A DNA stretch of 64,000 bases from the sequence record MF360958.1. One strand, 5' to 3'. Both the position numbers and the translations under genes were made by a program. Every line of letters begins with the position of its first letter. Positions within the stretch are counted from its first letter, which is position 1. Below, piece by piece: positions 16,670 to 39,387 of the stretch. The notes beneath the pieces were generated by a model. That model made no database searches. It was not told the origin of the DNA and saw only the letters and a list, made by a program, of their open reading frames with translations.

Positions 16670-16684
16670 TTGGAGGATTTTATT

Positions 16685-18682: not shown

Positions 18683-18710
18683 AAGAGCAACCATTTGGTT
18701 GCTCTTTTTT
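18683..18710 (+). terminator. Rho-independent terminator after uvsX
   Basis: AAGAGCAACC-ATTT-GGTTGCTCTT plus T run. Confidence 0.8.
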
Positions 18711-18753
18711 ATTGATTATGATAAGTTTATAGAAAATAAAAAGGTATAAAGCA

Positions 18754-19290
18754 ATGGTTATGTCAACAAAAGAACTTAATGAATCCATGGATGATTTTAA
18801 AGCGTCTATACTGGTACAAGATCCTATATTAATCGCTAATTATGAAAATGAATTAGATGAACAATTATTATATAATGTTATCCAAATAGATCCTAAACTA
18901 ATCAAATTCATGAAATATCCAAATCAAGAATTACAGAGAAAAGCTTTAACTGGACAAAATATTTCAGAATTTACTATTAACTATATCAATAATCCTACTG
19001 AAGATATCATTAAAGAATGTATAGATTATGATCCTTATAATTCATTATTGTATATAAAAAACATCCCTGAGCATCTTTTAGAATACGCGATAATGAATCA
19101 TCCTGTACTATTAGAGTTGATACGTCATCCATCTGATAAATTGCAATTATTATCTTTAGAATATTTTTGGTCAAGTAAATGGTATAGCCGTATTCTTTCA
19201 AGTTATGAACGAAGTAGTGATACTAAGTTTCACAATGAAATTAAAAAATTAAAATTAACCAAAGGCCCAATGAAGTTTGGAGATATATAG
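18754..19290 (+). CDS. Helical-repeat protein, KLKL-tail family member 1
   Basis: DP..I..I.NP.E repeats (DUF4116-like); C-terminal W...Y...FHNEIKKLKLTKGP. Confidence 0.75.
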   Translation: MVMSTKELNESMDDFKASILVQDPILIANYENELDEQLLYNVIQIDPKLIKFMKYPNQELQRKALTGQNISEFTINYINNPTEDIIKECIDYDPYNSLLYIKNIPEHLLEYAIMNHPVLLELIRHPSDKLQLLSLEYFWSSKWYSRILSSYERSSDTKFHNEIKKLKLTKGPMKFGDI

Positions 19291-19291
19291 T

Positions 19292-19639
19292 ATGTATGCC
19301 GATGAGGTTATTACAATACTCGAAGATGGTAATATAGATGCGCATATTATGGATGATGAAGTTATTTATTCATTAATCACTACTGATCCTTGTACGTCTA
19401 TGCTTATGATCAAAAATCTTAATGATGATCATAAGTATTATGCGTTGGAATGTTATCCATTCTCTATAGTGTTCATGCATGAACCTTGTGATGATTTACA
19501 ACTCTATGCTTTAGGAAACAATTGGACAGAAACTTTCTATGAATTTCTAATGAAGGAATGTGAACGGTATGATGAAGATTATTTTCATAACCGAATAAAA
19601 CGTTTAAAGTTAAAACATGGCCCATTAGTAGATTCTTGA
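19292..19639 (+). CDS. KLKL-tail family member 2 (start revised to ATG 19292)
   Basis: LQLYALGNNW...FY...FHNRIKRLKLKHGP; GGAG RBS. Confidence 0.75.
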   Translation: MYADEVITILEDGNIDAHIMDDEVIYSLITTDPCTSMLMIKNLNDDHKYYALECYPFSIVFMHEPCDDLQLYALGNNWTETFYEFLMKECERYDEDYFHNRIKRLKLKHGPLVDS

Positions 19640-24637: not shown

Positions 24638-25549
24638 TGTTGGTCCTTTATATAATGTTCTAGATAATACTTACCAAGCTCAAAAAATAAATCGGTAGGT
24701 TCTTCAATTCTATTTTCCATTGCTAACAATACAAATCGATTCGTTTTTGCCATAACTTCTACATCATCAGGAATATTAGCCATGTTTTTTGTTGTATCAA
24801 CATCTTCCAGATAATCATTTAATAATTCACGTTTGTTCTCAAATATTGATTTGATATGATTAAAAGCGCCTTCAATGTATTTTTTTTTCAATATCATACT
24901 TTTTCATTCTTTTATAGATGTTTTTTAATGATTCATCAGAAAAATCATCTGTGTTTTGTTCTATATAAAATCTAATATCATTAATAAAATCAATTAATAA
25001 TCTTCGTGTTTCTTTATTTTCATGTTCATTTGAATATTTAAAAATAGCTTTAATCCAATCAGGATAGTTCAATGTATTACTTGATAAATTAAGATCAACT
25101 GTTAAATCATTAATATTTTTATTATAGAAGAATTTCGCATGATCTATTGGAAAAAATATATATGGTTCTCCATATTCTGCTGCGTTATGTATGCTATTTG
25201 TTATATAGAATAAATTTCTTATAGGTTCACCTAGTAATTGTTTTGATTCCTTATTTATATGATTATGAAATAAGACCATCGAATCTTTAGGCATTTGTCG
25301 ATAACGAAAAGTTAATATTTTGTTAGTATATTCCTCCGGTTTTTGTGAACCATGATAAAAGAGATGATCTGTTAAGTTATCGTTGAAAGATAAACTTTTA
25401 AGTTTCTTAATTAAATTATCTGAACTTAATTCTTTATCATATATCGGTTTTAAATAAGTTTGAAAATAATCACCTTCGATGATAGTTTTAAATATATCAT
25501 TAATATTGTCTTCATTATTGTTTTCTATAAGTATATCGTTAATCTTCAT
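24634..25549 (-). pseudogene. ADP-ribosyltransferase-like protein, type B copy 2, split by a +1 frameshift at an A9 run (24880-24888)
   Basis: True start MKINDILIE at 25549; FYHGS, PKDS, EYGEPY in ORF 24872-25576; EVMAKTNRFVL in ORF 24634-24897; A8 would give one 304-aa protein. Confidence 0.7.
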
Positions 25550-26510
25550 TTGTATAATCTCTAATAATATCTTCAATAATATCTGCGTATAAACTTGGTT
25601 TTAAGAATAAAGCCTGTTTTGCATCTAAAATAGATTCTGAAAAATAATCTAAATTCTCAATCTTTTGTGTAGTTTCTATTGTTTCTATATATTTTTTATC
25701 GATATTAGTAACAAAATGATTTTTTATAATTTTGTATATAGTGTCATTTAAAGAATAAATAGTATCTTTTAAAAGTTGTTCAAATAGTTTTAAAGCTTCA
25801 ATAATTTCGTTTTCTTTATCATTATCATCTATATCATCTATATCATCAGCAAAAGTATTTTTAAATAAATCTGTGATTTTACTTACTACTAGATTTTTAG
25901 GTAGTGTTCCTGTTCTTAAAATTTCTATATAATTTTGAGGACTTATTATAGATAAATCTTCAAGGAAACTATCTTTATTATCATCTATAATTTTATTAAA
26001 ATCTTTGTTGATAAGTTTTGAAATATCGTTTACATATTGATGTTTTGTTAAAGCATCATATATTTTTTCAAATATTAAAGATTCTAGTTCATCATAATTT
26101 ATAATAATGCTCAAGTCAGCATAAAGATCACGAATATTGTTTGATTGATAAATGTTATAATCTCCTAGCGGAATGATTTTATAAGTATTAATTCCATAAC
26201 TAGAAGCAATAGAATTATTAGGTGTAATGAATAGTTTATTACGTATCTTTATACCAAAATGCTGTTTAGAAAGTTCATTAACAATATCGTGAATAACAAC
26301 GTCAGTATCTTTAGGTTGGGAACGTTCTGTAATATCAATGATATCCATATTAGATAATGTTACGTCAGTACCGTGATGTAATGCATTACCATCTTTAATA
26401 GATTCAAAATTATTAGTGAAATAATTGCTGTTTACAATAAGATCTTTATAATAATAAAAGTCTTCGTTACTTATAGAATCGTTCTCTTTTAACAGATCAT
26501 TAATCTTCAT
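25539..26510 (-). CDS. ADP-ribosyltransferase-like protein, type A copy 2
   Basis: MKINDLLKE; LHHGT; RSQPKDT; IRNKLFITPNNSIASSYG; FSESILD. Confidence 0.62.
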   Translation of the reverse strand: MKINDLLKENDSISNEDFYYYKDLIVNSNYFTNNFESIKDGNALHHGTDVTLSNMDIIDITERSQPKDTDVVIHDIVNELSKQHFGIKIRNKLFITPNNSIASSYGINTYKIIPLGDYNIYQSNNIRDLYADLSIIINYDELESLIFEKIYDALTKHQYVNDISKLINKDFNKIIDDNKDSFLEDLSIISPQNYIEILRTGTLPKNLVVSKITDLFKNTFADDIDDIDDNDKENEIIEALKLFEQLLKDTIYSLNDTIYKIIKNHFVTNIDKKYIETIETTQKIENLDYFSESILDAKQALFLKPSLYADIIEDIIRDYTNED

Positions 26511-27412
26511 TATTGTTCCTTTATATAGTTTTCAAAATAATATTTTCCTAAAGGTACAAAAACATCATCTTCTGAACCAATAGTTGGTAAAAGTATAAAA
26601 CGATTAGGCTTGGCCATAACTTCACCTTCTTCGGGTATACTTGCGATACTATCCGTTTTCTTTATAAATCCTATATAATTGATAACTTTATCACGAAAGT
26701 ATTCTATACGTTTTTCAACATATCGAGCTATATAATCTGCATAATTTTCATCTAAACCAAAGTCTTGATATATTGAATAGATATACTTCTTTACTTTCTC
26801 AACAGAATCTTTTGATAATGTAATATCATCATTCTCTAATATATATTCCATTATTTGTTTTCTAAACGGCATTGTTTTGTCTGATTTTTTAATAGGTTCA
26901 TCATAAAATTCATGAAATTTAAATAAATTTTGAGCATCAAATGTTATTGTAAAATCAGATATATTAGGATTATAATAGAATTCACATTCATCTATAGGAA
27001 AAAATGCGTAGAATGAACCATACTCTGTTGCTTCTGATAATTCTTTAGTTAAGAATAAAAGACTTCTTACAGCTTCGCCTAGTTTTTCTTTGCTTAGCTC
27101 ATTAACATAGTTATGAATAAATTTAAGTGTATCTTTAGGTTGTTTGCGATATTTAAATGTTAATACTTTATTACTGTATTCTTTATCAAACATTCCATGT
27201 AATATATAGTGTTTAGATAATTCCTTCATTAAATTTTCATTATGTAGTGCTGTTTCAATAGAATTACTGTCTGAAGATTTTTCATTTTTTAAATACCTAT
27301 CATATATAGGTTTCAAGTAATTTTGAAAATAGTAACCATCAATTATTGCTTGATATAAATGATCTTTAGAATCATCTTTTGAATTTTCTTTAAGTATATC
27401 ATTAACCTTCAT
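26510..27412 (-). CDS. ADP-ribosyltransferase-like protein, type B copy 1
   Basis: MKVNDILKE; ILHG; RKQPKDT; VRSLLFLTKELSEATEYG; GEVMAKPNRFIL. Confidence 0.62.
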   Translation of the reverse strand: MKVNDILKENSKDDSKDHLYQAIIDGYYFQNYLKPIYDRYLKNEKSSDSNSIETALHNENLMKELSKHYILHGMFDKEYSNKVLTFKYRKQPKDTLKFIHNYVNELSKEKLGEAVRSLLFLTKELSEATEYGSFYAFFPIDECEFYYNPNISDFTITFDAQNLFKFHEFYDEPIKKSDKTMPFRKQIMEYILENDDITLSKDSVEKVKKYIYSIYQDFGLDENYADYIARYVEKRIEYFRDKVINYIGFIKKTDSIASIPEEGEVMAKPNRFILLPTIGSEDDVFVPLGKYYFENYIKEQ

Positions 27413-28398
27413 TTTGATTTTTTCCTTAAAATTTCCGAAACTATTTGGTTTTTAGCCGTTTTGCTAAGAAACAATACAGATTCAGAATCAATTATACATT
27501 CGGAGTGGTAATCTAATTCAGTTACATATTTTGTTTTTTCAATAGTATCAATGTAATTCGTCTGTATAGCATCTTTAAAGTGTTTATTTATAAGCTCGAT
27601 AATATCTTCTTTATTTTGAATCATTATTTTTTGCACTAACGATTCAAGTATTCCGAAAACAGAATCATCACCGCTTCCATCATCATTAGATACATAATCA
27701 TCAAGATTAATGAAATCTGTGAATAACAATTCATTGAATTTTATACTTACGAAATGAGCTAAATCATAGTAGCTTTGTTCATCGCCATTGAGGATAGAGT
27801 GATAAGTACTTGATTTATGATTAAATAAATATTTATTAAAATACTGATCTTTAACATTTTCCATATAGTTTGAAAAATTAAATTTTAATATTTCACTAAT
27901 ACTTTGTATTTCTTCATAGTTGTTGTTGATAATGCTTTGATAAACGTACTTATGAATTTTACTAGCGATGTTTTTGTATTGTGATATTTTAAAATCATCA
28001 CCATAAAAATCATCTATAGTGTTTGAATAATAGAGCTGATATGAACCAATAGGGTAAACGATATATTTAAACTTGCCATAAACCACCCCTTGGAATTCAG
28101 AAAGCGTAGTAAATAATTTGTTTCGAATTTCTATACCAAATTGTTGTTTTGACAACTCATTTGCAATATCATGTATAGCTTTATTACTATCACGTGGCTT
28201 CTCGCGATTCTTAATATCAAAGTGGCTGATATTTCCGTGATCTACTGTTGTATTATGATAAAGATTGAAATTGGTATTTTTTAGAATCGTATTTTTATTA
28301 TTTTTATAGAATTCGCTATTCATAATCAAGTCAACAGCATAATCAATTTCCTCCCGAGTTATTTTTTTATTTTCATTCAATAAATTATTGATTTTCAT
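27409..28398 (-). CDS. ADP-ribosyltransferase-like protein, type A copy 1
   Basis: MKINNLLNE; LYHNT; REKPRDS; IRNKLFTT...VYG; HSECIID. Confidence 0.6.
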   Translation of the reverse strand: MKINNLLNENKKITREEIDYAVDLIMNSEFYKNNKNTILKNTNFNLYHNTTVDHGNISHFDIKNREKPRDSNKAIHDIANELSKQQFGIEIRNKLFTTLSEFQGVVYGKFKYIVYPIGSYQLYYSNTIDDFYGDDFKISQYKNIASKIHKYVYQSIINNNYEEIQSISEILKFNFSNYMENVKDQYFNKYLFNHKSSTYHSILNGDEQSYYDLAHFVSIKFNELLFTDFINLDDYVSNDDGSGDDSVFGILESLVQKIMIQNKEDIIELINKHFKDAIQTNYIDTIEKTKYVTELDYHSECIIDSESVLFLSKTAKNQIVSEILRKKSK

Positions 28399-29135: not shown

Positions 29136-29621
29136 ATGCATATTGATCAACTTATCGAAACACTGAGTAACAGTACACGTCAAAGCCCTGAGATGAAATT
29201 TGTTATTGACTATCTTGAAGGTCAAAAATCTCAAGGTATTGGTGAAATGAGTGATGGTAAAGTTCTTGAAGTTATGAACTATGTAGCCAATCTTCAAGAA
29301 CAAACTAACATCAAACGTGTGAATGAAAGTTCGCAAGAAGTTAGTCATCATATTGCAAAACTTAAAGATCTTTCTGCGGATGATGTTCTTACAGGTTTCA
29401 TTCGAACAACACGCAAAACCGCTATTAGCTGTCTTCAACAGCAAATTGATAGTGATCAAGCTGATGGAAAATCCACTGAAATGAAGGAAGTTATTAAATA
29501 TGATCTGGAACTGGAAGAAAAGATTAGCAATCTTCCTTCCAAAGCTAAGCAAGAAATGCTTTCAGATTATGGTCATAAGCTTTTCGACGGTTTTCCATAT
29601 CAAGATAATCAGGAAAAATAA
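29136..29621 (+). CDS. Hypothetical early protein
   Basis: AGGAG RBS, own promoter, 161 aa. Confidence 0.75.
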   Translation: MHIDQLIETLSNSTRQSPEMKFVIDYLEGQKSQGIGEMSDGKVLEVMNYVANLQEQTNIKRVNESSQEVSHHIAKLKDLSADDVLTGFIRTTRKTAISCLQQQIDSDQADGKSTEMKEVIKYDLELEEKISNLPSKAKQEMLSDYGHKLFDGFPYQDNQEK

Positions 29622-29685
29622 TTAAAACTATTTACAAGGATGTAAATTTTTAGTATAATATTTGAATCGTTTGGAGGAAATAATT

Positions 29686-29913
29686 ATGGCAAAAATATCA
29701 ACAGTTGATGAACTCAAAAAAGCTCTTGAACAATATGATGACGACCTTCCTGTAGGGGGTGTCGGTCATTTTAATGAACTTCTTGAGTTTGATATTCAAG
29801 GTTTACGATATGCATATACTAATGATTGGAAACAACATCTTAAAGGCAAAGACACTAAGTCTTTTAAAATTCTTGAACTTTATATTGAAGATGCAGGGCC
29901 TGATCCAGATTGA
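29686..29913 (+). CDS. Hypothetical early protein (start ATG 29686)
   Basis: GGAGG RBS; TTTACA-N17-TATAAT at 29631-29659. Confidence 0.7.
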   Translation: MAKISTVDELKKALEQYDDDLPVGGVGHFNELLEFDIQGLRYAYTNDWKQHLKGKDTKSFKILELYIEDAGPDPD

Positions 29914-29930
29914 GGGAATTATCCCTCAAT
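29909..29930. terminator. Hairpin between convergent genes
   Basis: ATTGAGGGA-ATTA-TCCCTCAAT. Confidence 0.55.
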
Positions 29931-29992
29931 ATATTTTTTCGATTAATCTAAGAAAATGGATTTTTTATATCTTCTATTAACATTATTGAACC

Positions 29993-32077
29993 TTAATAAA
30001 CTGGTAGTGGCGGAACATAATCATCATCTTCGTCATCATCCCCATTACCTGTAATCCCCAACTGATCCATAAATTCATCATCTTCTTTCATCGTTTCCAT
30101 AGCCATTCGTATACAAATTACCATAGCCATAACCAAATCATCATGTTCACCCGTAGATGCCGCATACGTATTCCCACGACGAACAAAATGTTGCATTTGC
30201 TCAAGCAAAGGACGACTGCTAACTTCTAGTTTTTCGTTCTCAACCCAACTCTTTAAACGCATACAAGCAGTATGTTTACTTTCCTTGTTGGTATTATAAC
30301 CTTTACGGAAACGATTTCTTTGCCCCTTGCGCATTGGATTGTAGGGTTCACTCATAAAGTATCCAAAGAAATTGTCTTCACCGTACTCATCAATCAATAC
30401 CAATGGCGCTTCACCAACTGTATTGTTTTCAAGCGTCCAACGAACATTGTCTTCCTCAAATCCAGCTTCTTCAAACATATCCAATATACGTCTAAGTATC
30501 TTCAACTGTTCAGGCACATCACTTTTATTGTGCATCCATTCACCAACCTGAACCATTGTGGGGAATTCAAAAATTTGTATTGCAGAATAATCACCACCTG
30601 TACCCAAACTTGGATCATAACCAATCAGGTAAATATAATCCTTACTTAGTTCTTTGTACCAACGTATTTCGCCCTTACTTTTAGCAATTGGACTTTTCGT
30701 TTCAAGATTAGCCAGCTTTACCGCATTAATGAGTGTTTCTTCTTCTGATATGAATTCTAATTCATGCTCACGTAAGAAATATTCTTCACCGAACTGTCTA
30801 ATCTGATCGTATTTGTATTCTTCATCACGTTCAGGATGTTCATCCCATTTTACCTTCAATGCTTTAAAACCATTCACTCCAACTTCCATATCATTGCCAT
30901 AATCATCAATGGTCTTGTTCGCCAACTTCCACATGTTTGCAAATAGTGTATCATCGGTAGTAGGTGTGGTGGTGATAATACATTTACCACCTGTATTACT
31001 ACCTAAAATACCATTTTGTAAGAATGTATGGGTATGAGGAACCGTGAAATCATATGTAAAGTCTTGATAAGATTTTTCAATACGAGTTATTGTTAACCAT
31101 TGTGTTTCATACTTTTGATTACACTTAAATATTTGAATAGCTTGTTTATTCACACGATATTCATAGTTGAAATTGTTCAACATTTGAACAAATATACTTA
31201 ATGCATGTTCGTTCCATTTTGGAATAATATAACCGCGTGTTTCGATAAATCGATCCAAAGTACGTCTGGTTATGTTCATATAATACTCTGGATTGTTTTC
31301 AAAGTTACGATCTATATCATGAGGACTGACTTCAAGATCCCCTTCAATATTCATACCACGATCAATACGTAAGAACATTCCTGTGTTTAACTGTTCAGCA
31401 GGAATCATTCGTGCATTATCATTAATGTTTCTTCGACTGTATAAAGGATGATCAGGCGTAACTTCAACAATTTGACCATTTTCTAATCGTATTCGATATG
31501 TTTCAGAGGCAGGTGAAACATAACCATGAGAAACATCTTCGATACCACGTTTACCCCAAACCTTGAGATTATCAATCTCGAAATATTCACCAATAGAACG
31601 ATTTTCAAAATAATTGTCTATCTTTTCAAAACCATTGTCGGTCAGAATAATCGTGCCCGGAGCCAAGCATGAAATAGTAGGATAAATGGATGCCCAAAAC
31701 TTTGTCGCAATATTCTTACGGACGAAAGCAAATTCGTCACACTGAGATACATTCCCGCCATTGGCGTATATAGTATTTGAATCGGATTCGTATATATCAT
31801 ACGTATCTTCTAAGAAATCGTATTTTATAGAAGATATCTTTTCATAACCATTGATTGTTTCTATATATTGACCAACGGAAAGATTATAAGCAGGAATTTT
31901 TTCATTATTAATAATGAATTCGTGATCGGTAGTACAATGTATTTCACGATTGGTTTCAGTAGTAATGCGATAGGTATGTTTGTTACTGGATGGATTTTTA
32001 ATAACACCTTTAAAATTCTCCCAACCGTGTTGAGTCTCGATTTCGTATTTGTCATTTTCAATAAAAAACTGATTCAT
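29993..32077 (-). CDS. gp17: Large terminase, C-terminal half (Walker B to nuclease), preceded by a split-intein C-fragment and containing a second intein
   Basis: CDEFAFV Walker B, IITTTP, FLREHELEF, YLIGYDPSLGTGGDYSA, ENN..G, HDDLVMA; no Walker A half in the window; own CATAAATA promoter and GAGGG RBS. Confidence 0.9.
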   Translation of the reverse strand: MNQFFIENDKYEIETQHGWENFKGVIKNPSSNKHTYRITTETNREIHCTTDHEFIINNEKIPAYNLSVGQYIETINGYEKISSIKYDFLEDTYDIYESDSNTIYANGGNVSQCDEFAFVRKNIATKFWASIYPTISCLAPGTIILTDNGFEKIDNYFENRSIGEYFEIDNLKVWGKRGIEDVSHGYVSPASETYRIRLENGQIVEVTPDHPLYSRRNINDNARMIPAEQLNTGMFLRIDRGMNIEGDLEVSPHDIDRNFENNPEYYMNITRRTLDRFIETRGYIIPKWNEHALSIFVQMLNNFNYEYRVNKQAIQIFKCNQKYETQWLTITRIEKSYQDFTYDFTVPHTHTFLQNGILGSNTGGKCIITTTPTTDDTLFANMWKLANKTIDDYGNDMEVGVNGFKALKVKWDEHPERDEEYKYDQIRQFGEEYFLREHELEFISEEETLINAVKLANLETKSPIAKSKGEIRWYKELSKDYIYLIGYDPSLGTGGDYSAIQIFEFPTMVQVGEWMHNKSDVPEQLKILRRILDMFEEAGFEEDNVRWTLENNTVGEAPLVLIDEYGEDNFFGYFMSEPYNPMRKGQRNRFRKGYNTNKESKHTACMRLKSWVENEKLEVSSRPLLEQMQHFVRRGNTYAASTGEHDDLVMAMVICIRMAMETMKEDDEFMDQLGITGNGDDDEDDDYVPPLPVY
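30995..31669 (-). mobile_element. Contiguous intein in TerL (225 aa) with a shrunken endonuclease remnant
   Basis: Starts CLAPGT after YPTIS, block B VTPDHPL, ends YDFTVPHTHTFLQNGILGSN followed by Thr. Confidence 0.9.
31742..32077 (-). mobile_element. Intein C-fragment (112 aa) of an atypically split intein, ending in Gln
   Basis: No block A; has EIETQHGWENFKG, block B CTTDHEF, block F/G YDIYE...YANGGNVSQ followed by Cys. Confidence 0.8.
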
Positions 32078-32130
32078 AATTCCCTCATATATTTTCTTAT
32101 ATGAATATTTATGAATTATGAATCAGTTTT
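32065..32130 (-). promoter_or_regulatory. Perfect 18-bp inverted repeat covering the terL start codon, with a late promoter (32106-32113) between the arms
   Basis: AAAACTGATTCATAATTC (32065-32082) and GAATTATGAATCAGTTTT (32113-32130). Confidence 0.85.
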
Positions 32131-32160
32131 AATTATAAACTATAAGGTTTATTCTATATT

Positions 32161-33186
32161 TTAATCATTTACATATTTTTTACCTTTCTCTCTAAATTTA
32201 TAAAAAGGTTTCATTTTCTCAAGTAACCCGGCTCTTTCAAGAACTTTCATACTGGAATGACCAATATTGTTTTTATGGTCCTCATTAATAATATCGAAAA
32301 TGATATTAAATTCAGTCGAAGATTCTTGCTCTGTATAACCGGTCATAGTTAGCAATTCATTTTTAGTAATACTGCTTGAGTTGTTCTTTTTATTATTTTC
32401 TGATTTTGTTAGTAGTTGAAGATTGTTAACATCTCCTACACATATTGGGGATATGCTCTCATTCCATCCATTAACAATACTGAACATATGGTCAATTTGA
32501 TAACCATCGTCTTCATCTGTCATCTTGGAAAGTTTTTCACCTTTTGCTACGTAATCTTTTACATATTTAAGTAAGAATTCTATGATACGTTCATAACGTT
32601 GAAACGGTAGGGTCCACGATTGATGCCCATACTTTTCAGCTTTAGTCTGATTGCCTTTGACGATACTTTCCGAAGCAATTTGTTGATAACCGTTACGACC
32701 ATATTCATCTTTTTTGGAAAGATGGGTATTGCGTGTTTTCTCTCCCAACATATCATAGCGACGTTTACCGGTTTCGGGATCGACTTCATTCAACGTTTCC
32801 ATCTTTTTCTTATGAGAGACATCGTACTTGGACATATGGTTACCATTCTCATCTAAGACAGGATTGCCTTGATCGTCATACGCCATTTCTTTTAAACCAC
32901 CTGAAATCTTTTTACTGAGACATTCAGCTACTTTCCCTTTCATTTCGGGACACAGTTCATAGTATTCTTCCTGAGTGATTCCAAGTGTCTTTTCAATATG
33001 TGGTTTACGGATCTTAGTGAATCGTACTTGAGCGATAGGACAGATGATATAGTCGATATCTTCTTGAGAGTCAGGATGATAAAGACCATCCGCTTCGCGT
33101 TTACGCTGGCGTCTATCCAGTTCTTTTAATTTTTGAGATTGTGCTTGACGGATTTGGGTGATTCGTTGTATAGTATTCTCGTTCAT
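32161..33186 (-). CDS. Free-standing HNH-type homing endonuclease
   Basis: N-terminal DYIICPI...H..G.T.EEY..P zinc-finger-like part; C-terminal YQIDHMFSIVNG...NNLQLLTKSENNKK. Confidence 0.7.
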   Translation of the reverse strand: MNENTIQRITQIRQAQSQKLKELDRRQRKREADGLYHPDSQEDIDYIICPIAQVRFTKIRKPHIEKTLGITQEEYYELCPEMKGKVAECLSKKISGGLKEMAYDDQGNPVLDENGNHMSKYDVSHKKKMETLNEVDPETGKRRYDMLGEKTRNTHLSKKDEYGRNGYQQIASESIVKGNQTKAEKYGHQSWTLPFQRYERIIEFLLKYVKDYVAKGEKLSKMTDEDDGYQIDHMFSIVNGWNESISPICVGDVNNLQLLTKSENNKKNNSSSITKNELLTMTGYTEQESSTEFNIIFDIINEDHKNNIGHSSMKVLERAGLLEKMKPFYKFREKGKKYVND

Positions 33187-33340: not shown

Positions 33341-33416
33341 TTGTATGTATAAACATTGTATTGAAAAATAGGTATACGTTGTGGTATGATGAAAAAAACA
33401 TACTAAGGGTTATGAT

Positions 33417-34475
33417 ATGAGTACCAGCTTAGACGAATACTTTCAAAATAGTGATGAATCTACTCGCGAACAAATTCTTGAGAACATTATCTTTGAAAAT
33501 CATGGATATAGTAACCATGATTTAACAAAAATTAGTCTCAATAATTATTACATTAAAAAGATTATTGATGGTGATATTAATAATAATACGAGAGCGAGTA
33601 TTTTTGGCATTATTTCCTTAATGTTTGCATTAGGTGAAAGCCTATGTGATGAAACATGGAAAATGGTATTTGAGAAAAAGCCTCGTTGTTTAATGGTGTA
33701 TCCTCAAGCGCGTTCAAAACCGTTGAAAGATGATATTATTGAGTATGGTTTAAGAAAATATTATGAACATGGCGAAAAAGTCTTAAACTCTTTTCCAGAT
33801 AGTCATTGTATTAAAGAGATTTTTGAAATTCAGAAATCCGTTAATGATGAATTCTATAAAATCATTATTGATAATGAGCCGGATCTTATTCCATTTTTGG
33901 AAGATTTACCACAATCGATTATCGATTATTTTGTTAATCTGATGAATGACAATGGCTATGGTTATGATTTTTCAAACATTAACGACTATAGTGAAGATGT
34001 ACTTTGTGAAATCATAGAAGCATTTCCTTTTGCGTATATTCTTATTTCTAATCCTAGTGATGAAATTAATAAGATAATGATTGATCATAATATATTTTAC
34101 ATAAAAATTTTAAGAAATCAAACAGATAATTTCTATTCATACGTACTAGATAAAGAAATACGACGTGTGGATATTTTTAAAAGTTTTGTTAATCCTTCAA
34201 AAGAGGTTCAATATAAAGCTATTGGTATGAATCCCTCTTCAATATCGCATGTTAGCGATCCTGATGAACATTCTCAGCAATTAGCTATTGAATACAATCC
34301 TGAAAATATTGTGTATATAGATGCTCCTTATGAGCATATACTGTTAAAAGCGTTAAAAACTGAATGGAATGTGTCTGTATATGAGATTGTTTGTAATAAT
34401 ATCCAAAATTATAGTGATGAATTCAGGCATTACTTTAACAAGTTAAAACTGGAACGAGGCATTCCGGTAGGCTAA
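33417..34475 (+). CDS. Helical-repeat protein, KLKL-tail family member 3
   Basis: NPS.E.Q..A repeats; W...Y...FRHYFNKLKLERG; TTGAAA-N18-TATGAT promoter upstream. Confidence 0.8.
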   Translation: MSTSLDEYFQNSDESTREQILENIIFENHGYSNHDLTKISLNNYYIKKIIDGDINNNTRASIFGIISLMFALGESLCDETWKMVFEKKPRCLMVYPQARSKPLKDDIIEYGLRKYYEHGEKVLNSFPDSHCIKEIFEIQKSVNDEFYKIIIDNEPDLIPFLEDLPQSIIDYFVNLMNDNGYGYDFSNINDYSEDVLCEIIEAFPFAYILISNPSDEINKIMIDHNIFYIKILRNQTDNFYSYVLDKEIRRVDIFKSFVNPSKEVQYKAIGMNPSSISHVSDPDEHSQQLAIEYNPENIVYIDAPYEHILLKALKTEWNVSVYEIVCNNIQNYSDEFRHYFNKLKLERGIPVG

Positions 34476-34499
34476 TATTGCGACTATAAGAGAAATTAT

Positions 34500-35597
34500 A
34501 TGGAACATGATACGACACTTAACGATTATTTTTATTCTTGTGATGAAAAACAACGTGTGAGAATTCTTCATGATATTATTTTTGAAGATAACGGGTACTA
34601 CTGTGATGACCTTAGAAAGATTGATCTAAATGAACATTATATTAACAAAATTATCGAGTTTAACAGTACCGTATCCACGATAAACTTAATAACTACTGTT
34701 CCTGTAAGCAAACTGACTGACAATAATTTAAAGAATATATTCAAACATAACCATCGTTTCATAAAAGTATATTCTTATATATTTGAGAAACCGCTTTCCG
34801 AAGATGTTTTTCAATATGCATTACAATGTTCTTTCGATAATGGTGAAGTTATAGCAGATCATCCAGATCCAGATTATTTAGATAATGATATAAGGCGATT
34901 TATATCACTTCATGAACCTATTAGTGATGATTCAAAAAAGATTATTATTAAAAACAATATAGTATACTTACCATTTTTAGAAGGTTTGTCTGAATCTGTG
35001 AAAGAGTTTACATGTGGGTTTGTTAAAAATAACATAGATTCAAAATACGATTATAGAAATATCAATAAATTTTCTCAGGATGTTCAATGCGATATTGTAC
35101 GTCAATATCCCTATCTGTATGAACTAATTGATAATCCTAGCGAAGCTGTTAATCGAGAGTTGATTGAAGCAGATCCTTATTGGATTAGTGTTGTCAATAA
35201 TCAAACGGGTGATTTACAATTAAGGGCGCTGTATATACTTTATGGAAGTAATGGTATTATTGGTACGCCCATATTTTCTTTTTTCAAGAATCCTTGTAAA
35301 AATGTTCAATATGAAGCAGTACGGTTGGATCCAATTCAAATATCGTTGATTAAAGATCCAAATTATGATATGCAGAAATTAGCAGTTGAGCATAATCCAG
35401 ACTGTATTAAACATATCAAACATCCTTATGAAGATATTGCGCGTGTTGTATTAGATAGTGGTTATTGGAATGCTAGAATATATGATGTTATTAAAGATAA
35501 CATTCATCAATATAGCAATGAATTTAATCATTATTTTAATAAATTAAAGTTGAAATATGGTGATCCTAATAATTTCACAGAAAGATCTACTAAATGA
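34500..35597 (+). CDS. Helical-repeat protein, KLKL-tail family member 4
   Basis: Paralog of 33417; FNHYFNKLKLKYG. Confidence 0.8.
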   Translation: MEHDTTLNDYFYSCDEKQRVRILHDIIFEDNGYYCDDLRKIDLNEHYINKIIEFNSTVSTINLITTVPVSKLTDNNLKNIFKHNHRFIKVYSYIFEKPLSEDVFQYALQCSFDNGEVIADHPDPDYLDNDIRRFISLHEPISDDSKKIIIKNNIVYLPFLEGLSESVKEFTCGFVKNNIDSKYDYRNINKFSQDVQCDIVRQYPYLYELIDNPSEAVNRELIEADPYWISVVNNQTGDLQLRALYILYGSNGIIGTPIFSFFKNPCKNVQYEAVRLDPIQISLIKDPNYDMQKLAVEHNPDCIKHIKHPYEDIARVVLDSGYWNARIYDVIKDNIHQYSNEFNHYFNKLKLKYGDPNNFTERSTK

Positions 35598-35661
35598 TAT
35601 AGGTTGAATAAAGAAGATGAACAATGGTTCAAACATCAGGTTAACAAACAGAAATTAGAGA

Positions 35662-36783
35662 ATGAATTTTATGACTAATATAAGATTGCATAGAGAATTA
35701 ACCGAATTAAATAATTTTTTCAATAATAGCGATGTAATATTTCAACATTATTTTTTGGATAAAATTATTCACCAAATTGATAGTTATAAAGACGACCTAC
35801 TTTCATATGTTGATTTGAGTGATTATTATCAAAAACAAATAATTGATTGTAAGTTGTATAGATCAGATATATTCGCATCATTTAGTAATCTTAACGGTAT
35901 CTATATTGCGCATCATTTTAAAAATTTAACACAAGATAATATATGTTATATGATTGATAAGAATCCATTGCCTTCTTTTATCATACATCATGTTTCAATA
36001 AAAGATGAGAACGTGTTAAAATATTGTTTACAACGTTTTCTGAAATCTTCAAAAAATAGAAGTATTGAATACTGCTCTGATGGTATGTTTGAAAAAATTC
36101 TGCAACAACATTACCCTGTATCTGAAGATATACAACTATTAATTATACACTACTATCCTCGATTTATTATTCATTTTGATGTTGATGATCTCTACCCAAG
36201 TGTATTGAATAAGTTTTATGAAATCATGGGTAAAAAATCGAGTATTGATTTTCGAAATATTAATGATTATCAAGAAAATGCTTTATCTGGTATTGTCTTT
36301 CAATATCCTTTTATATATAAATTTATAAAAAATAAAACATATTTAATCAATAATTCGTTTATTCAAAATGATCCTGATAATATTCGATTCATTGATAATT
36401 CTAGTGAAGACTTACAATTAATGAGTGTTAGAATCAGTGGATGTATTACGTTAGATTATCATTGTAATTCGTTACGTCATATTAATAATCCGTCTGAAAA
36501 TGTTATATGGAAAGCTATTAAATCGAATACTAGATGTATAGAATATGCTATTAATCCTAGTTATGAAATGCAAAAATATTGTATCAAAAGAAATCCTTAT
36601 AGTATAGTTTATATCAAGAATACAATACCAGAAGATTTACAGTTAATTGCTCTGGAAAATTTATGGAATATAGAAAATTATAATCATATATTAAATAATT
36701 TAGGTCCGCACAGTGATTATTTCAATCATGAACTAAAAAAATTAAAGTTAAAAAATGGATATATTGAGGATGGTACTGAATAA
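35662..36783 (+). CDS. Helical-repeat protein, KLKL-tail family member 5
   Basis: LQLIALENLW...Y...FNHELKKLKLKNG. Confidence 0.8.
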   Translation: MNFMTNIRLHRELTELNNFFNNSDVIFQHYFLDKIIHQIDSYKDDLLSYVDLSDYYQKQIIDCKLYRSDIFASFSNLNGIYIAHHFKNLTQDNICYMIDKNPLPSFIIHHVSIKDENVLKYCLQRFLKSSKNRSIEYCSDGMFEKILQQHYPVSEDIQLLIIHYYPRFIIHFDVDDLYPSVLNKFYEIMGKKSSIDFRNINDYQENALSGIVFQYPFIYKFIKNKTYLINNSFIQNDPDNIRFIDNSSEDLQLMSVRISGCITLDYHCNSLRHINNPSENVIWKAIKSNTRCIEYAINPSYEMQKYCIKRNPYSIVYIKNTIPEDLQLIALENLWNIENYNHILNNLGPHSDYFNHELKKLKLKNGYIEDGTE

Positions 36784-37286
36784 TGAGTTACTTAGATGAT
36801 GTTATTTCTAAAACTTGCGAACTTGATGATATAAGTAAAATGGATGACGTTCCTTACGATCTTCAAATGAAGGTTGTAAAACAAAATCCTATGAATATTA
36901 AATACATTAAACATCCATGTGAAGACGCACAGTTTGAAGCTTTTAACCAAGACGTGGTTTCTTGCAGATATATTATAAATCCTACTGAAAACTTCCAAGA
37001 ACATGTTATCAGATGTGGTATGGTACGTTTGGCAAAACGTAATATGTTTTCGTTTTCTAGAAAATCATTAGAGCTTGCTTTTGAATTAGATCCACATTGC
37101 ATTCTGTTTTTTCAAAAGGGAACTTTTATGTCGGATGATTTACAGTTATATGCTATTAAAAATGGTTGGGAATTACGCCTTTATAACGCTATTATGGAAC
37201 AGTTTACTAGGAAAGATGAAGAAGCATTTCATAACGAAATTAAAAAATTGAAGATTGAATTTGGTCCTATGAAAAAATACACTTGA
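36783..37286 (+). CDS. Helical-repeat protein, KLKL-tail family member 6
   Basis: LQLYAIKNGW...Y...FHNEIKKLKIEFGP. Confidence 0.8.
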   Translation: MSYLDDVISKTCELDDISKMDDVPYDLQMKVVKQNPMNIKYIKHPCEDAQFEAFNQDVVSCRYIINPTENFQEHVIRCGMVRLAKRNMFSFSRKSLELAFELDPHCILFFQKGTFMSDDLQLYAIKNGWELRLYNAIMEQFTRKDEEAFHNEIKKLKIEFGPMKKYT

Positions 37287-37422
37287 CAAATAATTGTAAC
37301 AACAGTAATATATAAACTGTTCCATTTAGATATGGAACATTATAAAGTGATTTTAAAAGTTACGTCATACGTAATAGCCTCCGAAAAATCCCTAGATTCC
37401 TCCATAGTCTAGGGATTTTTTT
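37283..37422 (+). ncRNA. Candidate small RNA (promoter, two hairpins, terminator with CCUCC loop)
   Basis: TTGACA-N17-TAATAT (37283-37311); stems 37318-37339 and 37360-37374; terminator 37384-37420; no RBS-led ORF. Confidence 0.45.
37384..37422 (+). terminator. Rho-independent (bidirectional) terminator
   Basis: AAAAATCCCTAGA-TTCCTCCATAG-TCTAGGGATTTTT. Confidence 0.85.
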
Positions 37423-37530
37423 ATGTATAAACGTCTAGTTCAATATTTCTGATTTTATTAATAAATAATTATGCATATTAAGGATAATAATGCTCAAAAC
37501 ATTATTTTATTGATAAAGGAGAATAAACTT

Positions 37531-39387
37531 ATGTCAGATACAAAAAATTATGGCATTAGTGGCATTGGCAGTAATGTTGAATTGGGCAAACGTGGCAATC
37601 GATTCAAAAACGAAACTGATAAAATTTCAGTTCGTGATTTTGATGATGCTAACTTTGTTCCTATTTCAGCGGGTGATCCTGTTGGAGATAATGATCTTGT
37701 AACAAAATCATATTTAGAGCAACAGGCTTTTGATCCTACACTTAAATCACCTGATGATGGTGATTTAACAGATGGAGCAGTAACAGATTGGACGGTAGGT
37801 TCTACCACCTATTCCACAGCTATTGATGATCTTAATGGCATTCTAGGCCGTCTGGTTCCAACAGCACCCCCTGAACTTTCTACATTTACTATAAATGCTA
37901 CTAGTGGAAGCAATCAACTATTAGCTCAAAACGCTATTGATAACACAACTAATGCACCAAGTGCGGGTAGCAGTGTTTATACGGTGTTTGATAGCAGTTT
38001 CCAATCAACACAAGCAAATGGTGGAAATGGCGCATTTGGTGGTGATGTAGAAGGTGCAGATGGTAACCTATTTCTTTCAGGTGAAACAGGAACATTATTC
38101 AGTTATGTAAACGGTACTCAAGATGGCTCTATAGTTCTAGATGGAACTGATAATACTGGTACGTATGGTTCATTGGAAGTTCTTTCAGATACAGCTTATC
38201 CAGCAGATACCCCCGGATTCTATACAGCACTAAAAGCTCGTATTAACAAATCTGCGGTAAGCATTGGTTATAATGAGGCATATCTAGAACATTCGGAAAC
38301 TGGATCAACTAATACTGTTTCATGGGTTTATGATGATGTAGCAAATGCTCCTAGTATTTCTAATCAGAGTTATTCATTAGATTCCGCTGTTAGCAAACAA
38401 AGTTCTGGTATCAATCATATGACAGATGGTGATACCTTGAATGTTAGTGCTACAGTAGATAATCTTGTAGGACAAACTTACATTACTGGTACAGTATTAC
38501 GTTTTACTACCGGAGTAGGTGTTGGAACGCTTAACATGGATGCTACCCAACTTGGTACAGGTCTTACATTTCCCCTTGATGCAAATCTAGGCCCTCAAAC
38601 AACGTCAGGTAAAACGCTTTCAATAGCATCAACCGCAACGTTTGATGAAACCGATATTCAAGTACGTGCGTGGAATGCTAATGGTGCTACCGGTTCAAGT
38701 GTAGTTTCCGGCGATCCAGTACTTGTATATACTAGTGCTCTTGAAGGTGGTAACAAGCCTCACGAATCACAAATTAATGGTTCAAGTGCTGATGCATACC
38801 GTTATTATCTAGGTTCCGGTTTTACGGGTGATACGCCTAGTGGAACGTTAGATGCACCTACTACAACCAATTGGGATTCGACACAGCTTCTTAATGCTTC
38901 TGGTTATGAACATGAAGCCGTTACAGTAGCTGGTGTAGTCAAGCATGACACAACCAATTATACTACTGGTTATATCCCTGTCACAACCGGTGCTGATTAT
39001 TCCACAAAAGGAACAGATCAGTATGTAACCTATGTGTTTAACCAATCTACTCTTTCTAGTATAAGTCTTGATATTAGTGGTTCTTACAGTGGTTTATGGG
39101 TAGCACTTCCCGGAATCTCGGATGATGCGGGAATATCACCTAATGCTCTTGGTGGAAATTGGTGGGATGCTTTTGAACTATATAACGGTTCTGGTGCCCC
39201 CGGACGTACAGGCGATAGTTCTGCTGGTTGTGCTGTAGGTTCTGCGGCAAGTGGTTCCAGTGGTACGGTTAACCTAACGTTTGGCACACAATCCACAACA
39301 AACTCTACCAATAATGCGGTGATAGTACGAATTAAGCTAAATGCTGGTGACAGTATTTCAGCACTAAGTATTGGAAACACACCATAA
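37531..39387 (+). CDS. Virion structural protein (fibre/decoration-like; start revised to ATG 37531)
   Basis: AATAAATA late box at 37460; AAGGAG RBS; N-terminal KNYGISGIGSNVELGK; T/G/S/D-rich beta composition. Confidence 0.75.
   Translation: MSDTKNYGISGIGSNVELGKRGNRFKNETDKISVRDFDDANFVPISAGDPVGDNDLVTKSYLEQQAFDPTLKSPDDGDLTDGAVTDWTVGSTTYSTAIDDLNGILGRLVPTAPPELSTFTINATSGSNQLLAQNAIDNTTNAPSAGSSVYTVFDSSFQSTQANGGNGAFGGDVEGADGNLFLSGETGTLFSYVNGTQDGSIVLDGTDNTGTYGSLEVLSDTAYPADTPGFYTALKARINKSAVSIGYNEAYLEHSETGSTNTVSWVYDDVANAPSISNQSYSLDSAVSKQSSGINHMTDGDTLNVSATVDNLVGQTYITGTVLRFTTGVGVGTLNMDATQLGTGLTFPLDANLGPQTTSGKTLSIASTATFDETDIQVRAWNANGATGSSVVSGDPVLVYTSALEGGNKPHESQINGSSADAYRYYLGSGFTGDTPSGTLDAPTTTNWDSTQLLNASGYEHEAVTVAGVVKHDTTNYTTGYIPVTTGADYSTKGTDQYVTYVFNQSTLSSISLDISGSYSGLWVALPGISDDAGISPNALGGNWWDAFELYNGSGAPGRTGDSSAGCAVGSAASGSSGTVNLTFGTQSTTNSTNNAVIVRIKLNAGDSISALSIGNTP

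What the first reader, a model, noticed from the sequence alone, without database searches (positions are those of the whole stretch)
33417..37286. Variable helical-repeat proteins sharing a conserved C-terminal docking-like domain
Seen: four tandem early genes here, plus two at 18754-19639, with divergent N-termini, varying numbers of NP.E..Q..A...P..I repeats, and in every case a tail of the form L..A(L/I)...W...Y..I...F.(N/H)..(K/N)KLK(L/I)..G. Inference: modular adaptors (variable solenoid for target binding, constant tail for a common partner), analogous to poxvirus ankyrin/F-box families. The phage ClpX zinc domain is one testable partner; anti-defence binding is another possibility.
Basis: partly seen in the sequence, partly recalled or inferred. 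Interest (0 to 1): 0.65.

Follow-up and report, generated by a model that had tools for sequence, protein, structure and literature searches.

The report
Phage repeat-protein family with shared tail
A giant salt-pond phage carries 28 diverged copies of an uncharacterised helical-repeat protein (DUF4116) that all end in the same short tail. The tail looks like the end-cap of the repeat stack rather than a proven docking site, so this is a large but fairly ordinary viral gene-family expansion.

Summary
The window is Salicola phage SCTP-2 (440 kb; window base 1 = record 186001). The six ORFs, their repeats and their shared C-terminal tail are real.

- **Size of the family.** The six are part of a much larger family. 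28 ORFs in 8 clusters carry the tail, always at the C-terminus.
- **The repeats.** The 22-residue repeat (NPSEELQLKAVKNNPYSIKYIK) is Pfam DUF4116 (PF13475). This is a function-unknown alpha-solenoid repeat that is also expanded in giant viruses.
- **The fold.** AlphaFold2 models two members as continuous helical solenoids (pLDDT 88-89; tail 94-97 in gene 206).
- **The tail.** Its first half is the last DUF4116 repeat, with Trp at repeat position 15 (hhalign 95%, E 2.6e-8). After a variable loop comes one helix, ..F..E(I)(K/N)KLK(L/I)..GP. This helix resembles the Lys-rich half-repeat that ends some other DUF4116 proteins.
- **Known docking domains.** No F-box, PRANC or other docking fold was found.
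- **Distribution.** Outside SCTP-2, the tail appears only in two uncultured relatives.

Best reading: a lineage-specific, old, fast-diverging DUF4116 expansion whose constant tail is mainly a structural C-cap. A shared docking role is not excluded. The ClpX test could not be run. "Early genes" is unverified.

The parts
33417..34475 (+). SCTP-2 gene 226, 352 aa: long-form family member (helical N-terminal region, DUF4116-type repeats, W-tail)
   Evidence: ORF; annotation; phrog_25923 E 1e-175; AF2 pLDDT 87.9, all-alpha hairpin stack; strong repeats at aa 259-302
34500..35597 (+). SCTP-2 gene 227, 365 aa: long-form member, 39% identical to gene 226
35662..36783 (+). SCTP-2 gene 228, 373-aa ORF (annotated start at 35671, 370 aa): long-form member; its stop overlaps the start of gene 229
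   Evidence: weak DUF4116 hit of 14.3 bits
36783..37286 (+). SCTP-2 gene 229, 167 aa: short-form member (repeats plus W-tail)
   Evidence: (phrog_5925 E 1e-52); weak DUF4116 hit of 13.5 bits
18754..19290 (+). SCTP-2 gene 205, 178 aa: short-form member
19277..19639 (+). SCTP-2 gene 206, 120-aa ORF (annotated start at 19292, 115 aa): minimal member
   Evidence: AF2 pLDDT 89.2, helices 22-31, 33-39, 45-54, 56-61, 67-76, 80-89, 95-109
34323..34472 (+). Tail of gene 226 (aa 303-352): variant last repeat with Trp317, loop, terminal helix F336..KLKLERG
   Evidence: tail HMM E 2e-18; helices 306-315, 319-327, 334-347
35421..35594 (+). Tail of gene 227 (aa 308-365)
   Evidence: tail HMM E 1e-16
36622..36780 (+). 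Tail of gene 228 (aa 321-373)
   Evidence: tail HMM E 1e-18
37125..37283 (+). Tail of gene 229 (aa 115-167)
   Evidence: tail HMM E 2e-19
19126..19287 (+). Tail of gene 205 (aa 125-178)
   Evidence: tail HMM E 1e-18
19481..19636 (+). Tail of gene 206 (aa 69-120 of the 120-aa ORF)
   Evidence: tail HMM E 1e-20; pLDDT 94-97 across the tail
33361..33390 (+). Sigma-70-like promoter match (TTGAAA, 18 nt spacer, TG-TATGAT) 27 nt upstream of gene 226; consensus match only
   Evidence: such sites are not enriched over shuffled sequence

Best explanation
The six genes belong to a lineage-specific expansion of DUF4116 (PF13475) alpha-solenoid repeat proteins in the jumbo phage SCTP-2. There are 28 tail-bearing genes in 8 clusters, about 5% of the gene set. 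Four further DUF4116 genes have a different architecture.

Each protein is a stack of 22-residue helix-turn-helix units. Paralogs differ in repeat number, in surface residues and in net charge. The most likely role is a set of protein-binding scaffolds aimed at different targets during infection; this part is inferred.

The constant tail is chiefly the structural C-terminal cap of the stack. It has three parts:
1. The last repeat, with Trp replacing the turn residue (Pro in the 22-residue consensus) at repeat position 15 and a lengthened second helix.
2. A variable loop.
3. A final amphipathic Lys-rich helix (E-I-K/N-K-L-K-L..G-P). This would seal the hydrophobic core that would otherwise face a next repeat.

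The tail is better conserved than the repeats. It is a single, positionally fixed element in every paralog, whereas the internal repeats are duplicated, lost and exchanged.
For: Shown:
- Identity with SCTP-2.
- 50 profile matches over the genome; 28 C-terminal tails.
- Tail-bearing paralogs pass the Pfam DUF4116 threshold (gene 522 at 31.0 bits; gene 518 at the 24.9-bit cut-off). The tail-less paralog gene 45 scores 62.3 bits. 10 of 28 members hit DUF4116 at E<=0.1, and no other family recurs.
- A profile of the six window proteins retrieves 5364 proteins through its repeat positions. Most of the top 120 hits of the broader family profile A3 carry PF13475.
- AF2 models of genes 226 and 206 are all-alpha hairpin stacks (pLDDT 87.9 and 89.2). 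The tail is a confident continuation of the stack.
- The best structural neighbours are DUF4116 proteins of giant viruses and of phage Atu_ph07.
- The first half of the tail aligns with the repeat in register 1-21 (hhalign 95%, E 2.6e-8).
- Generic DUF4116 proteins also end, straight after the last full repeat, in a Lys-rich helix.
- The P-(S/T)-E-x-h-x4-(K/N)-K-L register of the terminal helix is found at the C-termini of SCTP-2 gene 37 and of 6 of 124 generic DUF4116 proteins. It is found in 0 of 1500 internal repeats.
- Atu_ph07's four DUF4116 proteins lack the W-tail but end in a similar ..E-Y-(I/V)-K-M-(K/R)-(I/L)-G helix.
- Repeat-number change between close relatives: P0129 and P0209 share 91% DNA identity up to the distal repeats. 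They then differ by a 150-nt versus 483-nt replacement that ends 15 codons before the stop.
- The tree is star-like, with branches of about 1 substitution per site. pI ranges from 4.4 to 9.7.
Against: - The terminal helix is the best-conserved element of the family. K-L-K carries 3.8-4.1 bits per position, and mean pairwise identity is 0.40, against 0.25 for the variant repeat. This includes polar Lys, Asn and His residues, which a pure cap need not keep.
- By helical periodicity, the conserved L/I after K-L-K lies opposite the main hydrophobic face. That could mark an exposed conserved patch. This is my inference; no coordinates were available.
- Homology of the terminal helix to a repeat helix is not statistically supported (hhalign E 0.13).
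- Only about 5% of generic DUF4116 C-termini share its register.
- Target binding by the solenoid is inferred from the fold class alone. DUF4116 has no known function in the papers found here.
Confidence: 0.6

Rival explanations
1. Docking module. The tail, or at least its conserved Lys-rich helix surface, binds one shared partner. 28 different solenoid 'receptors' would then be plugged into a common phage or host machine. One candidate is the phage's own ClpXP(S) protease system. This would be a phage analogue of viral ankyrin/F-box adaptor families.
For: - Very strong protein-level conservation of K-L-K..G-P, despite saturated divergence elsewhere.
- The tail is present in every one of 28 paralogs and in at least 4 genes of uncultured relatives.
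- The phage encodes ClpX, ClpS and ClpP.
- Two rows of the BFVD fold search are F-box-annotated Marseillevirus proteins. This hints that similar solenoids may be joined to F-boxes in giant viruses (a lead only, 9-10% identity).
Against: - Half of the tail is an ordinary repeat.
- The motif lies in a confidently predicted helix that is continuous with the solenoid.
- No similarity to any known docking domain by Pfam, Foldseek, VIA-align or the ESM Atlas.
- The residues after G-P are not conserved, so it is not a C-terminal degron.
- No partner gene stood out next to the clusters in the annotation tables, where nearly everything is 'hypothetical protein'. This was not tested formally.
- No interaction test could be run.
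Confidence: 0.2
2. Self-association element. The terminal helix has an acidic N-terminal end and a basic C-terminal end. It could pair with the same helix of another family member, or stack on the N-terminal end of another solenoid. This would give homo- or hetero-oligomers among paralogs, which are often encoded by overlapping or adjacent genes.
For: - The charge pattern (D/E)(D/E)xF..E-I-K-K-L-K-L-K.
- Overlapping or abutting gene pairs 228/229 and 205/206, which is compatible with stoichiometric co-expression.
Against: - Acidic N-terminal and basic C-terminal helix ends are also the normal helix-dipole preference (my knowledge).
- No oligomer prediction could be run.
- Operon-style overlaps are common in phages.
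Confidence: 0.08
3. Targeting signal. The tail directs the proteins to a place, for example incorporation into the virion or prohead for injection with the DNA. DUF4116 repeats do occur in polyvalent proteins of mobile elements.
For: - DUF4116 is fused to ART-PolyVal (P0094) and to DUF3945 (P0002) in large proteins from metagenomes.
- A neighbouring SCTP-2 family was read by an earlier agent as capsid-targeted. That is a lead only.
Against: - Known T4-type capsid-targeting sequences are N-terminal (my knowledge).
- No T4-type late promoter motif lies upstream of the family genes.
- No virion proteome exists for this phage among the papers found.
Confidence: 0.05

Closest known systems
Pfam DUF4116 (PF13475) repeat proteins, including the multigene families of giant viruses (Klosneuvirus, Hokovirus, Catovirus, Bodo saltans virus, Mimivirus-like) and of phage Atu_ph07
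   Same: The same ~22-residue helix-turn-helix repeat (NP.E..Q..A(V/I)...g/p..(I/L).Y(I/L)). The same predicted alpha-solenoid. Multi-copy occurrence in very large viral genomes. Function unknown.
   Different: The SCTP-2 subfamily ends in a fixed unit: a Trp-bearing variant repeat, a loop and a KLKL..GP helix. That unit was absent from all but 2 of the roughly 250 other DUF4116 proteins examined and from Atu_ph07. With 28+4 genes this looks like the largest expansion among 50,697 phage records. Only 9 of those records matched a family member at all, but per-record counts are not gene counts.
Poxvirus ankyrin-repeat/PRANC (F-box-like) host-range proteins
   Same: Architecture by analogy: a variable repeat array followed by a constant short C-terminal helical element, as a multigene family in a large virus.
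   Different: No ankyrin, F-box or PRANC match. Bacteria have no SCF ligase. Here the constant element is itself partly a repeat. No partner is known.
Capping helices and cap repeats of alpha-solenoids (TPR 'solvating helix', designed armadillo/DARPin C-caps)
   Same: The terminal unit derives from the repeat. Residues facing the missing next repeat become polar or Lys. It is required at a single fixed position (my knowledge of those families; for this family).
   Different: Conservation of the polar residues is unusually high. A variable loop is inserted between the last repeat and the terminal helix.
ClpX adaptor SspB and its C-terminal ClpX-binding (XB) peptide
   Same: A short basic/hydrophobic C-terminal motif (LRVVK in SspB, from my knowledge, against KLKL here). 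The phage encodes its own ClpX with a zinc-binding N-domain.
   Different: The motif here is inside a helix with pLDDT above 90 and is followed by variable residues. It is not a disordered tethered peptide. Binding was not tested.

Membership tests
DUF4116 (PF13475) | Match to the Pfam HMM at or above the gathering score (24.9 bits) | tested here: met
   At family level. Tail-bearing paralogs: gene 522 at 31.0 bits, gene 518 at 24.9 bits. Tail-less paralog gene 45: 62.3 bits. 10 of 28 tail-bearing members hit at E<=0.1, best 9.8e-9. The six window proteins alone are below threshold (best 14.3 bits). A profile of the six retrieves 5364 proteins through its repeat positions. Most of the top 120 hits of the broader family profile A3 carry PF13475.
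DUF4116 (PF13475) | Tandem short helix-turn-helix repeats forming an alpha-solenoid | tested here: met
   AF2 models with pLDDT 87.9 and 89.2 show alternating ~10- and ~6-residue helices. The BFVD neighbours are DUF4116 proteins. An alpha-solenoid was predicted for the family in PMC8078820.
Poxvirus ANK/PRANC (F-box-like) adaptors | Ankyrin repeats | tested here: not met
   No ankyrin family hit for any of the 28 members at E<=0.1.
Poxvirus ANK/PRANC (F-box-like) adaptors | C-terminal F-box/PRANC domain that binds Skp1 | tested here: not met
   No F-box or PRANC hit. Tail-containing models match only generic helical units, with Z<=5.4. Skp1 binding is not applicable in a bacterial host.
ClpX adaptor with XB-type docking peptide | Flexible C-terminal peptide that binds the ClpX zinc-binding domain | tested here: inconclusive
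   The motif is helical at high confidence and is not at the extreme C-terminus, which argues against this.
Repeat-derived C-terminal cap of a solenoid | The cap is homologous to the repeat unit | tested here: met
   First half of the tail against the 22-aa repeat: hhalign 95%, E 2.6e-8, register 1-21. The terminal helix against the repeat is not significant (E 0.13).
Repeat-derived C-terminal cap of a solenoid | The terminal helix packs on the last repeat, with its conserved hydrophobic residues buried | tested here: inconclusive
   pLDDT is 94-97 in gene 206 and 86-93 in gene 226, with contiguous helices. Model coordinates are not returned, so burial could not be measured.
Repeat-derived C-terminal cap of a solenoid | An equivalent terminal element in other members of the superfamily | tested here: met
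   Generic DUF4116 proteins end in a Lys-rich half-repeat. The KKL register is shared with SCTP-2 gene 37 and 6 of 124 generic C-termini, against 0 of 1500 internal repeats. Atu_ph07 proteins end in ..EY(I/V)KM(K/R)(I/L)G.

The most novel reading that the evidence does not exclude
The tail is a true docking module. It would plug about 28 differently surfaced DUF4116 solenoids into one shared machine. The most attractive candidate is the phage's own ClpX/ClpP/ClpS system. That would give a bacteriophage a family of substrate adaptors for targeted degradation or remodelling of host proteins. It would be the functional counterpart of the ankyrin/F-box families of poxviruses and giant viruses.
Probability: 0.07. 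Interest if true: 0.8.

Novelty: new member of a known kind. Interest (0 to 1): 0.33.

Why it matters
DUF4116 is a widespread repeat of unknown function in bacteria, mobile elements, protists and giant viruses. SCTP-2 devotes about 5% of its genes to it, which looks like the largest such expansion among sequenced phages. Its host can be cultured.

The family therefore offers a tractable system for learning what DUF4116 solenoids bind. It would also show whether jumbo phages, like giant eukaryotic viruses, use expanded repeat families in host manipulation.

The practical value of this check is twofold. It gives the family a name. It also shows that the 'constant docking domain' is mostly the cap of the repeat array, so claims of a shared partner need direct evidence.

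Tried and rejected
- **Complex prediction.** There is no verdict of any kind.
- **AF2 with a 23-row alignment (A4).** They were used only in local alignment, local Pfam scans and scripts, as they had been before.
- **Fold searches.** The gene 226 model gave only generic armadillo, PPR, PUF and HEAT solenoids in the PDB (Foldseek, no E<=1e-3; VIA Z<=7.9). The gene 206 model likewise gave nothing specific (Z<=5.4).
- **ESM Atlas on the tail alone.** Scores were at most 0.86, with no informative family.
- **Searches for more tail-bearing relatives.** tblastn against 50,697 phage records found only SCTP-2. A word-based search with gene 229 found only itself. Pattern scans found nothing in IMG/VR or in JGI metagenomes. 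Two alignments were too diverged to give a search pattern.
- **Is the terminal helix a repeat helix A?** hhalign gives the expected register but E 0.13. A PSSM of generic caps was dominated by the NP(S/T)E start and picked internal repeats, so it was uninformative.
- **dN/dS by domain.** Not attempted. Paralogs are saturated, at about 1 amino-acid substitution per site, and no clear orthologue pairs exist. The SCTP-2-like contig has a gene-230 homologue at 67% identity, yet its family members match SCTP-2 paralogs only at 30-46% and mostly through repeats.
- **Expression timing.** No RNA run holds the locus. Promoter scans are not above background.
- **Literature.** Only 4 held papers mention DUF4116, and none gives a function. 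The jumbo-phage survey and the polyvalent-protein paper do not mention this family.
- **Conserved DNA element instead of a protein motif.** Rejected on the synonymous codon variation.


Full report
**Identity of the window.** The region 33417-37286 is 100% identical to Salicola phage SCTP-2 (MF360958.1, 440,001 bp, from a solar saltern) at 219417-223286. Window base 1 is therefore record base 186001. All genes discussed are annotated 'hypothetical protein'.

**Checking the observation.**
- The six ORFs exist exactly as listed.
- Their alignment shows invariant W, Y, F, L, K and G in the last ~45 residues, and the repeat-like NP..E..Q..A...P..I pattern before it.
- All six fall in PHROG families of unknown function: phrog_25923 for the three long proteins, and phrog_5925, 17056 and 35305 more generally.
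- A profile of the six, run over the whole phage record, gave 50 matches in 8 genomic regions.
- I fetched those regions and built a tail-only HMM. 25 ORFs matched at first and 28 after iteration. Every match lies at the C-terminus (E 1e-7 to 1e-20).
- The clusters lie at about 25.5-26.4, 48.9-52.6, 104.4-107.1, 204.8-205.6, 219.4-223.3, 343.8-345.5, 396.7-398.9 and 418.8-423.7 kb of the record.
- The tail consensus is (E/D)(D/E)lqL.AL...W....(F/Y)Y..i, then a variable stretch, then F..e(i)(K/N)KLK(l/i)..GP.
- Codons at the K-L-K-L..G-P positions vary synonymously, so the selection acts on the protein.

**What the repeats are.**
- The unit is 22 residues long, with consensus NPSEELQLKAVKNNPYSIKYIK.
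- The six window proteins are individually below Pfam's threshold for DUF4116/PF13475 (best 14.3 bits against 24.9).
- Paralogs pass it. Gene 45 scores 62.3 bits. The tail-bearing gene 522 scores 31.0 bits and gene 518 scores 24.9 bits.
- 10 of the 28 tail-bearing members hit DUF4116 at E<=0.1, and no other family recurs.
- The six-protein profile, run against 1.84 billion representative proteins, found 5364 hits. Nearly all matched through the two-repeat part of the profile.
- A word-indexed search with the broader 27-row family profile (A3) found 842 hits. Most of the top 120 carry PF13475.
- The proteins are therefore DUF4116 repeat proteins.
- DUF4116 has no assigned function in the papers found. 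The one modelling paper found predicts an alpha-solenoid (PMC8078820).

**Structure.**
- AF2 models gene 226 (352 aa) as an uninterrupted stack of helical hairpins (pLDDT 87.9, pTM 0.75). This includes the 'divergent' N-terminal two-thirds.
- Gene 206 (115 aa) is modelled as two hairpins followed by helices 67-76, 80-89 and 95-109 (pLDDT 89.2; 94-97 over the tail).
- PDB searches return only generic solenoids (armadillo, PPR, PUF, HEAT/TOG, designed repeats) below the tools' own significance guides.
- In the viral model library, after SCTP-2's own paralogs, the best hits are DUF4116 proteins. They come from Klosneuvirus, Fadolivirus, Sylvanvirus, Moumouvirus, Mimivirus LCMiAC01, Bodo saltans virus, Catovirus, Hokovirus and phage Atu_ph07.

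**Anatomy of the tail.**
- *First half.* The first 21-22 residues align with the ordinary repeat in exact register (hhalign 95%, E 2.6e-8). E4-E5-L6-Q7-L8-x-A10-(V/L)11 is kept, Trp replaces the turn residue at position 15, and Tyr20 is kept.
- *Loop and helix.* A loop of variable length follows. Then comes one helix of about 15 residues that ends in G-P.
- *Conservation.* That helix is the best-conserved element. Mean pairwise identity is 0.40, against 0.25 for the variant repeat. The K-L-K positions carry 3.8-4.1 bits.
- *Homology of the helix.* Its homology to a repeat helix is not statistically demonstrable (hhalign E 0.13, although in the expected register).
- *Three comparisons suggest it is a cap inherited from the DUF4116 superfamily:*
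  - Generic DUF4116 proteins typically stop straight after a last full repeat with a Lys-rich half-repeat such as NPSEEVKKLAKK or NPTEKVKALHKKLWES.
  - SCTP-2 gene 37 is a DUF4116 protein of a different architecture and ends in NPTEKVKELYKKLWES. Two tail-bearing paralogs keep (Q/K)PS(E/D)YL.K.VNKLKL in the same register. The register P-x3-h-x4-(K/N/H/R)-(K/R/Q)-(L/I/M/V) occurs at 6 of 124 generic C-termini and at 0 of 1500 internal repeats.
  - The four DUF4116 proteins of phage Atu_ph07 lack the W-tail but end in ..E-Y-(I/V)-K-M-(K/R)-(I/L)-G. That closely resembles ..E-I-K-K-L-K-L-x-x-G.
- *Conserved lysines.* Conserved Lys is also a feature of the ordinary repeat (K9, K12, K19, K22 of the consensus). 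The conserved lysines of the tail are therefore not by themselves evidence of a special interface.

**Distribution and evolution.**
- Outside SCTP-2, the tail was found in only two of the roughly 250 DUF4116 proteins I could inspect. These are P0129 (242 aa, ENA metagenome contig) and P0209 (353 aa, two Logan runs).
- The 6.9-kb contig with P0129 comes from an SCTP-2 relative. Its first gene is 67% identical to SCTP-2 gene 230, the gene just downstream of the finding.
- That contig carries at least four family genes. Three have visible tails, and one appears broken into three overlapping frames.
- Those tails resemble each other more than any SCTP-2 tail, and no one-to-one orthologues exist. 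This points to birth-and-death turnover.
- P0129 and P0209 are 91% identical in DNA up to the distal repeats. They then differ by a 150-nt versus 483-nt replacement, and homology resumes 15 codons before the stop. This is direct evidence for repeat-number change.
- Within SCTP-2 the tree is star-like, with terminal branches of about 1 substitution per site. Only some neighbouring genes pair up. The expansion is therefore old.
- Member pI ranges from 4.4 to 9.7. That argues for diversified surfaces rather than one common ligand such as nucleic acid.
- Pattern scans of IMG/VR and JGI metagenomes found no further tails.
- Among 50,697 phage records, only 9 match a family member at all. SCTP-2 has 18 matched places and Atu_ph07 has 12, which correspond to 4 genes there.

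**A second architecture in the same phage.** Genes 34, 37, 45 and 435 have DUF4116 repeats (eight tandem copies in gene 45) but no W-tail. They share a conserved N-terminal domain, MK(I/V)KHITQYLFES..KDAQ.KF.QEASEEEV... This matches the family an earlier agent of this scan described on another piece of the genome (s1-159008).

**How it probably works.**
- *Shown:* these are DUF4116 solenoids with a fixed C-terminal unit that is partly a repeat.
- *Inferred:* the solenoids act as protein-binding scaffolds with different specificities, and the tail caps the stack. I put this at about 0.6.
- *The docking reading* remains possible at about 0.2. The polar conservation is strong, and the phage encodes ClpX, ClpS and ClpP. 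Nothing found here positively supports it, and the planned ClpX-domain complex prediction could not be run.
- *Minor rivals:* self-association and a targeting signal.

**'Early genes'.** This is not established. There is a sigma-70-like site with an extended -10 at 33361-33390, and no T4-type late motif upstream of family genes. Promoter-like sites are not above the shuffled background, and no RNA data exist.

**Novelty and score.** The family was already clustered by PHROGs, and its repeat is a Pfam entry. I found no paper describing the SCTP-2 expansion or its tail. I class it as a new member of a known kind: a lineage-specific expansion of a known repeat family in a giant virus, with its own cap variant. 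Interest is 0.33. The adaptor-to-ClpXP reading would be far more interesting, but I give it about 7%.

**Procedural note.** I did not send those proteins to any fold or remote search afterwards.

Noticed in passing
It also has a ClpP gene about 80 kb away (PF00574, 233.8 bits). It therefore has a full ClpXP/ClpS set of its own.
   Followed up: partly
SCTP-2 record 29525-30931, 31619-32524, 37422-38756 and 346469-348415 (loci L032, L035): Four DUF4116 proteins lack the W-tail and share a strongly conserved N-terminal domain (MK(I/V)KHITQYLFES..KDAQ.KF.QEASEEEV...GYWIKQGW). Gene 45 has eight perfect-period 22-residue repeats. Gene 37 ends in the generic cap NPTEKVKELYKKLWES.
   Followed up: partly
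L036:2793-3628 (- strand), metagenome contig ERZ27266020 k141_258066: Three short overlapping ORFs (83, 81 and 83 aa) together look like one DUF4116/W-tail gene broken by frameshifts. This is either a decaying paralog in the SCTP-2 relative or an assembly error.
   Followed up: no
window 18690-18753, and SCTP-2 record about 396660-396708 (L033): The first genes of two family clusters (gene 205 and gene 480) share an upstream element, TGATAAGTTT(A/G)(T/-)AGAA...GGTATAAAGCA-ATG. At gene 205 it follows a terminator-like hairpin. It may be a shared promoter or translation-start cassette, or a remnant of the duplication.
   Followed up: no
Atu_ph07 record 175103-175753, 292230-292650, 395514-395897 and 295035-296501 (loci L040-L049): Agrobacterium jumbo phage Atu_ph07 has four DUF4116 proteins that share their own C-terminal ending, ..(V/A)(I/A)(E/D)Y(V/I/L)(K/R)(M/S)(K/R/A)(I/L/G)G... 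The 488-aa protein has a non-repeat N-terminal domain of about 300 residues.
   Followed up: partly
proteins P0094 (1710 aa), P0002 (1362 aa) and P0158 (277 aa) from the big profile search: DUF4116 repeats occur fused to ART-PolyVal (the ADP-ribosyltransferase of polyvalent proteins), to DUF3945 and to DUF7666. This links the repeat to conflict proteins of mobile elements.
   Followed up: partly
window 16670-18655 (+ strand): A 661-aa ORF reads like a RecA/UvsX-type ATPase whose P-loop (GDSG|C...HN|SGKS) and a later site (ISGG|C...SHN|SGQ) are each interrupted by an intein-like insert. I read this from the translation only.
   Followed up: no
L036:1494-2189 (+ strand): In the SCTP-2-like contig, a 231-aa protein lies between the gene-230 homologue and the DUF4116 genes. 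It is related (29-36% identity) to the tandem family at window 22780-27576 (SCTP-2 genes 213 and 216-218). The two multigene families are therefore neighbours in that relative.
   Followed up: no
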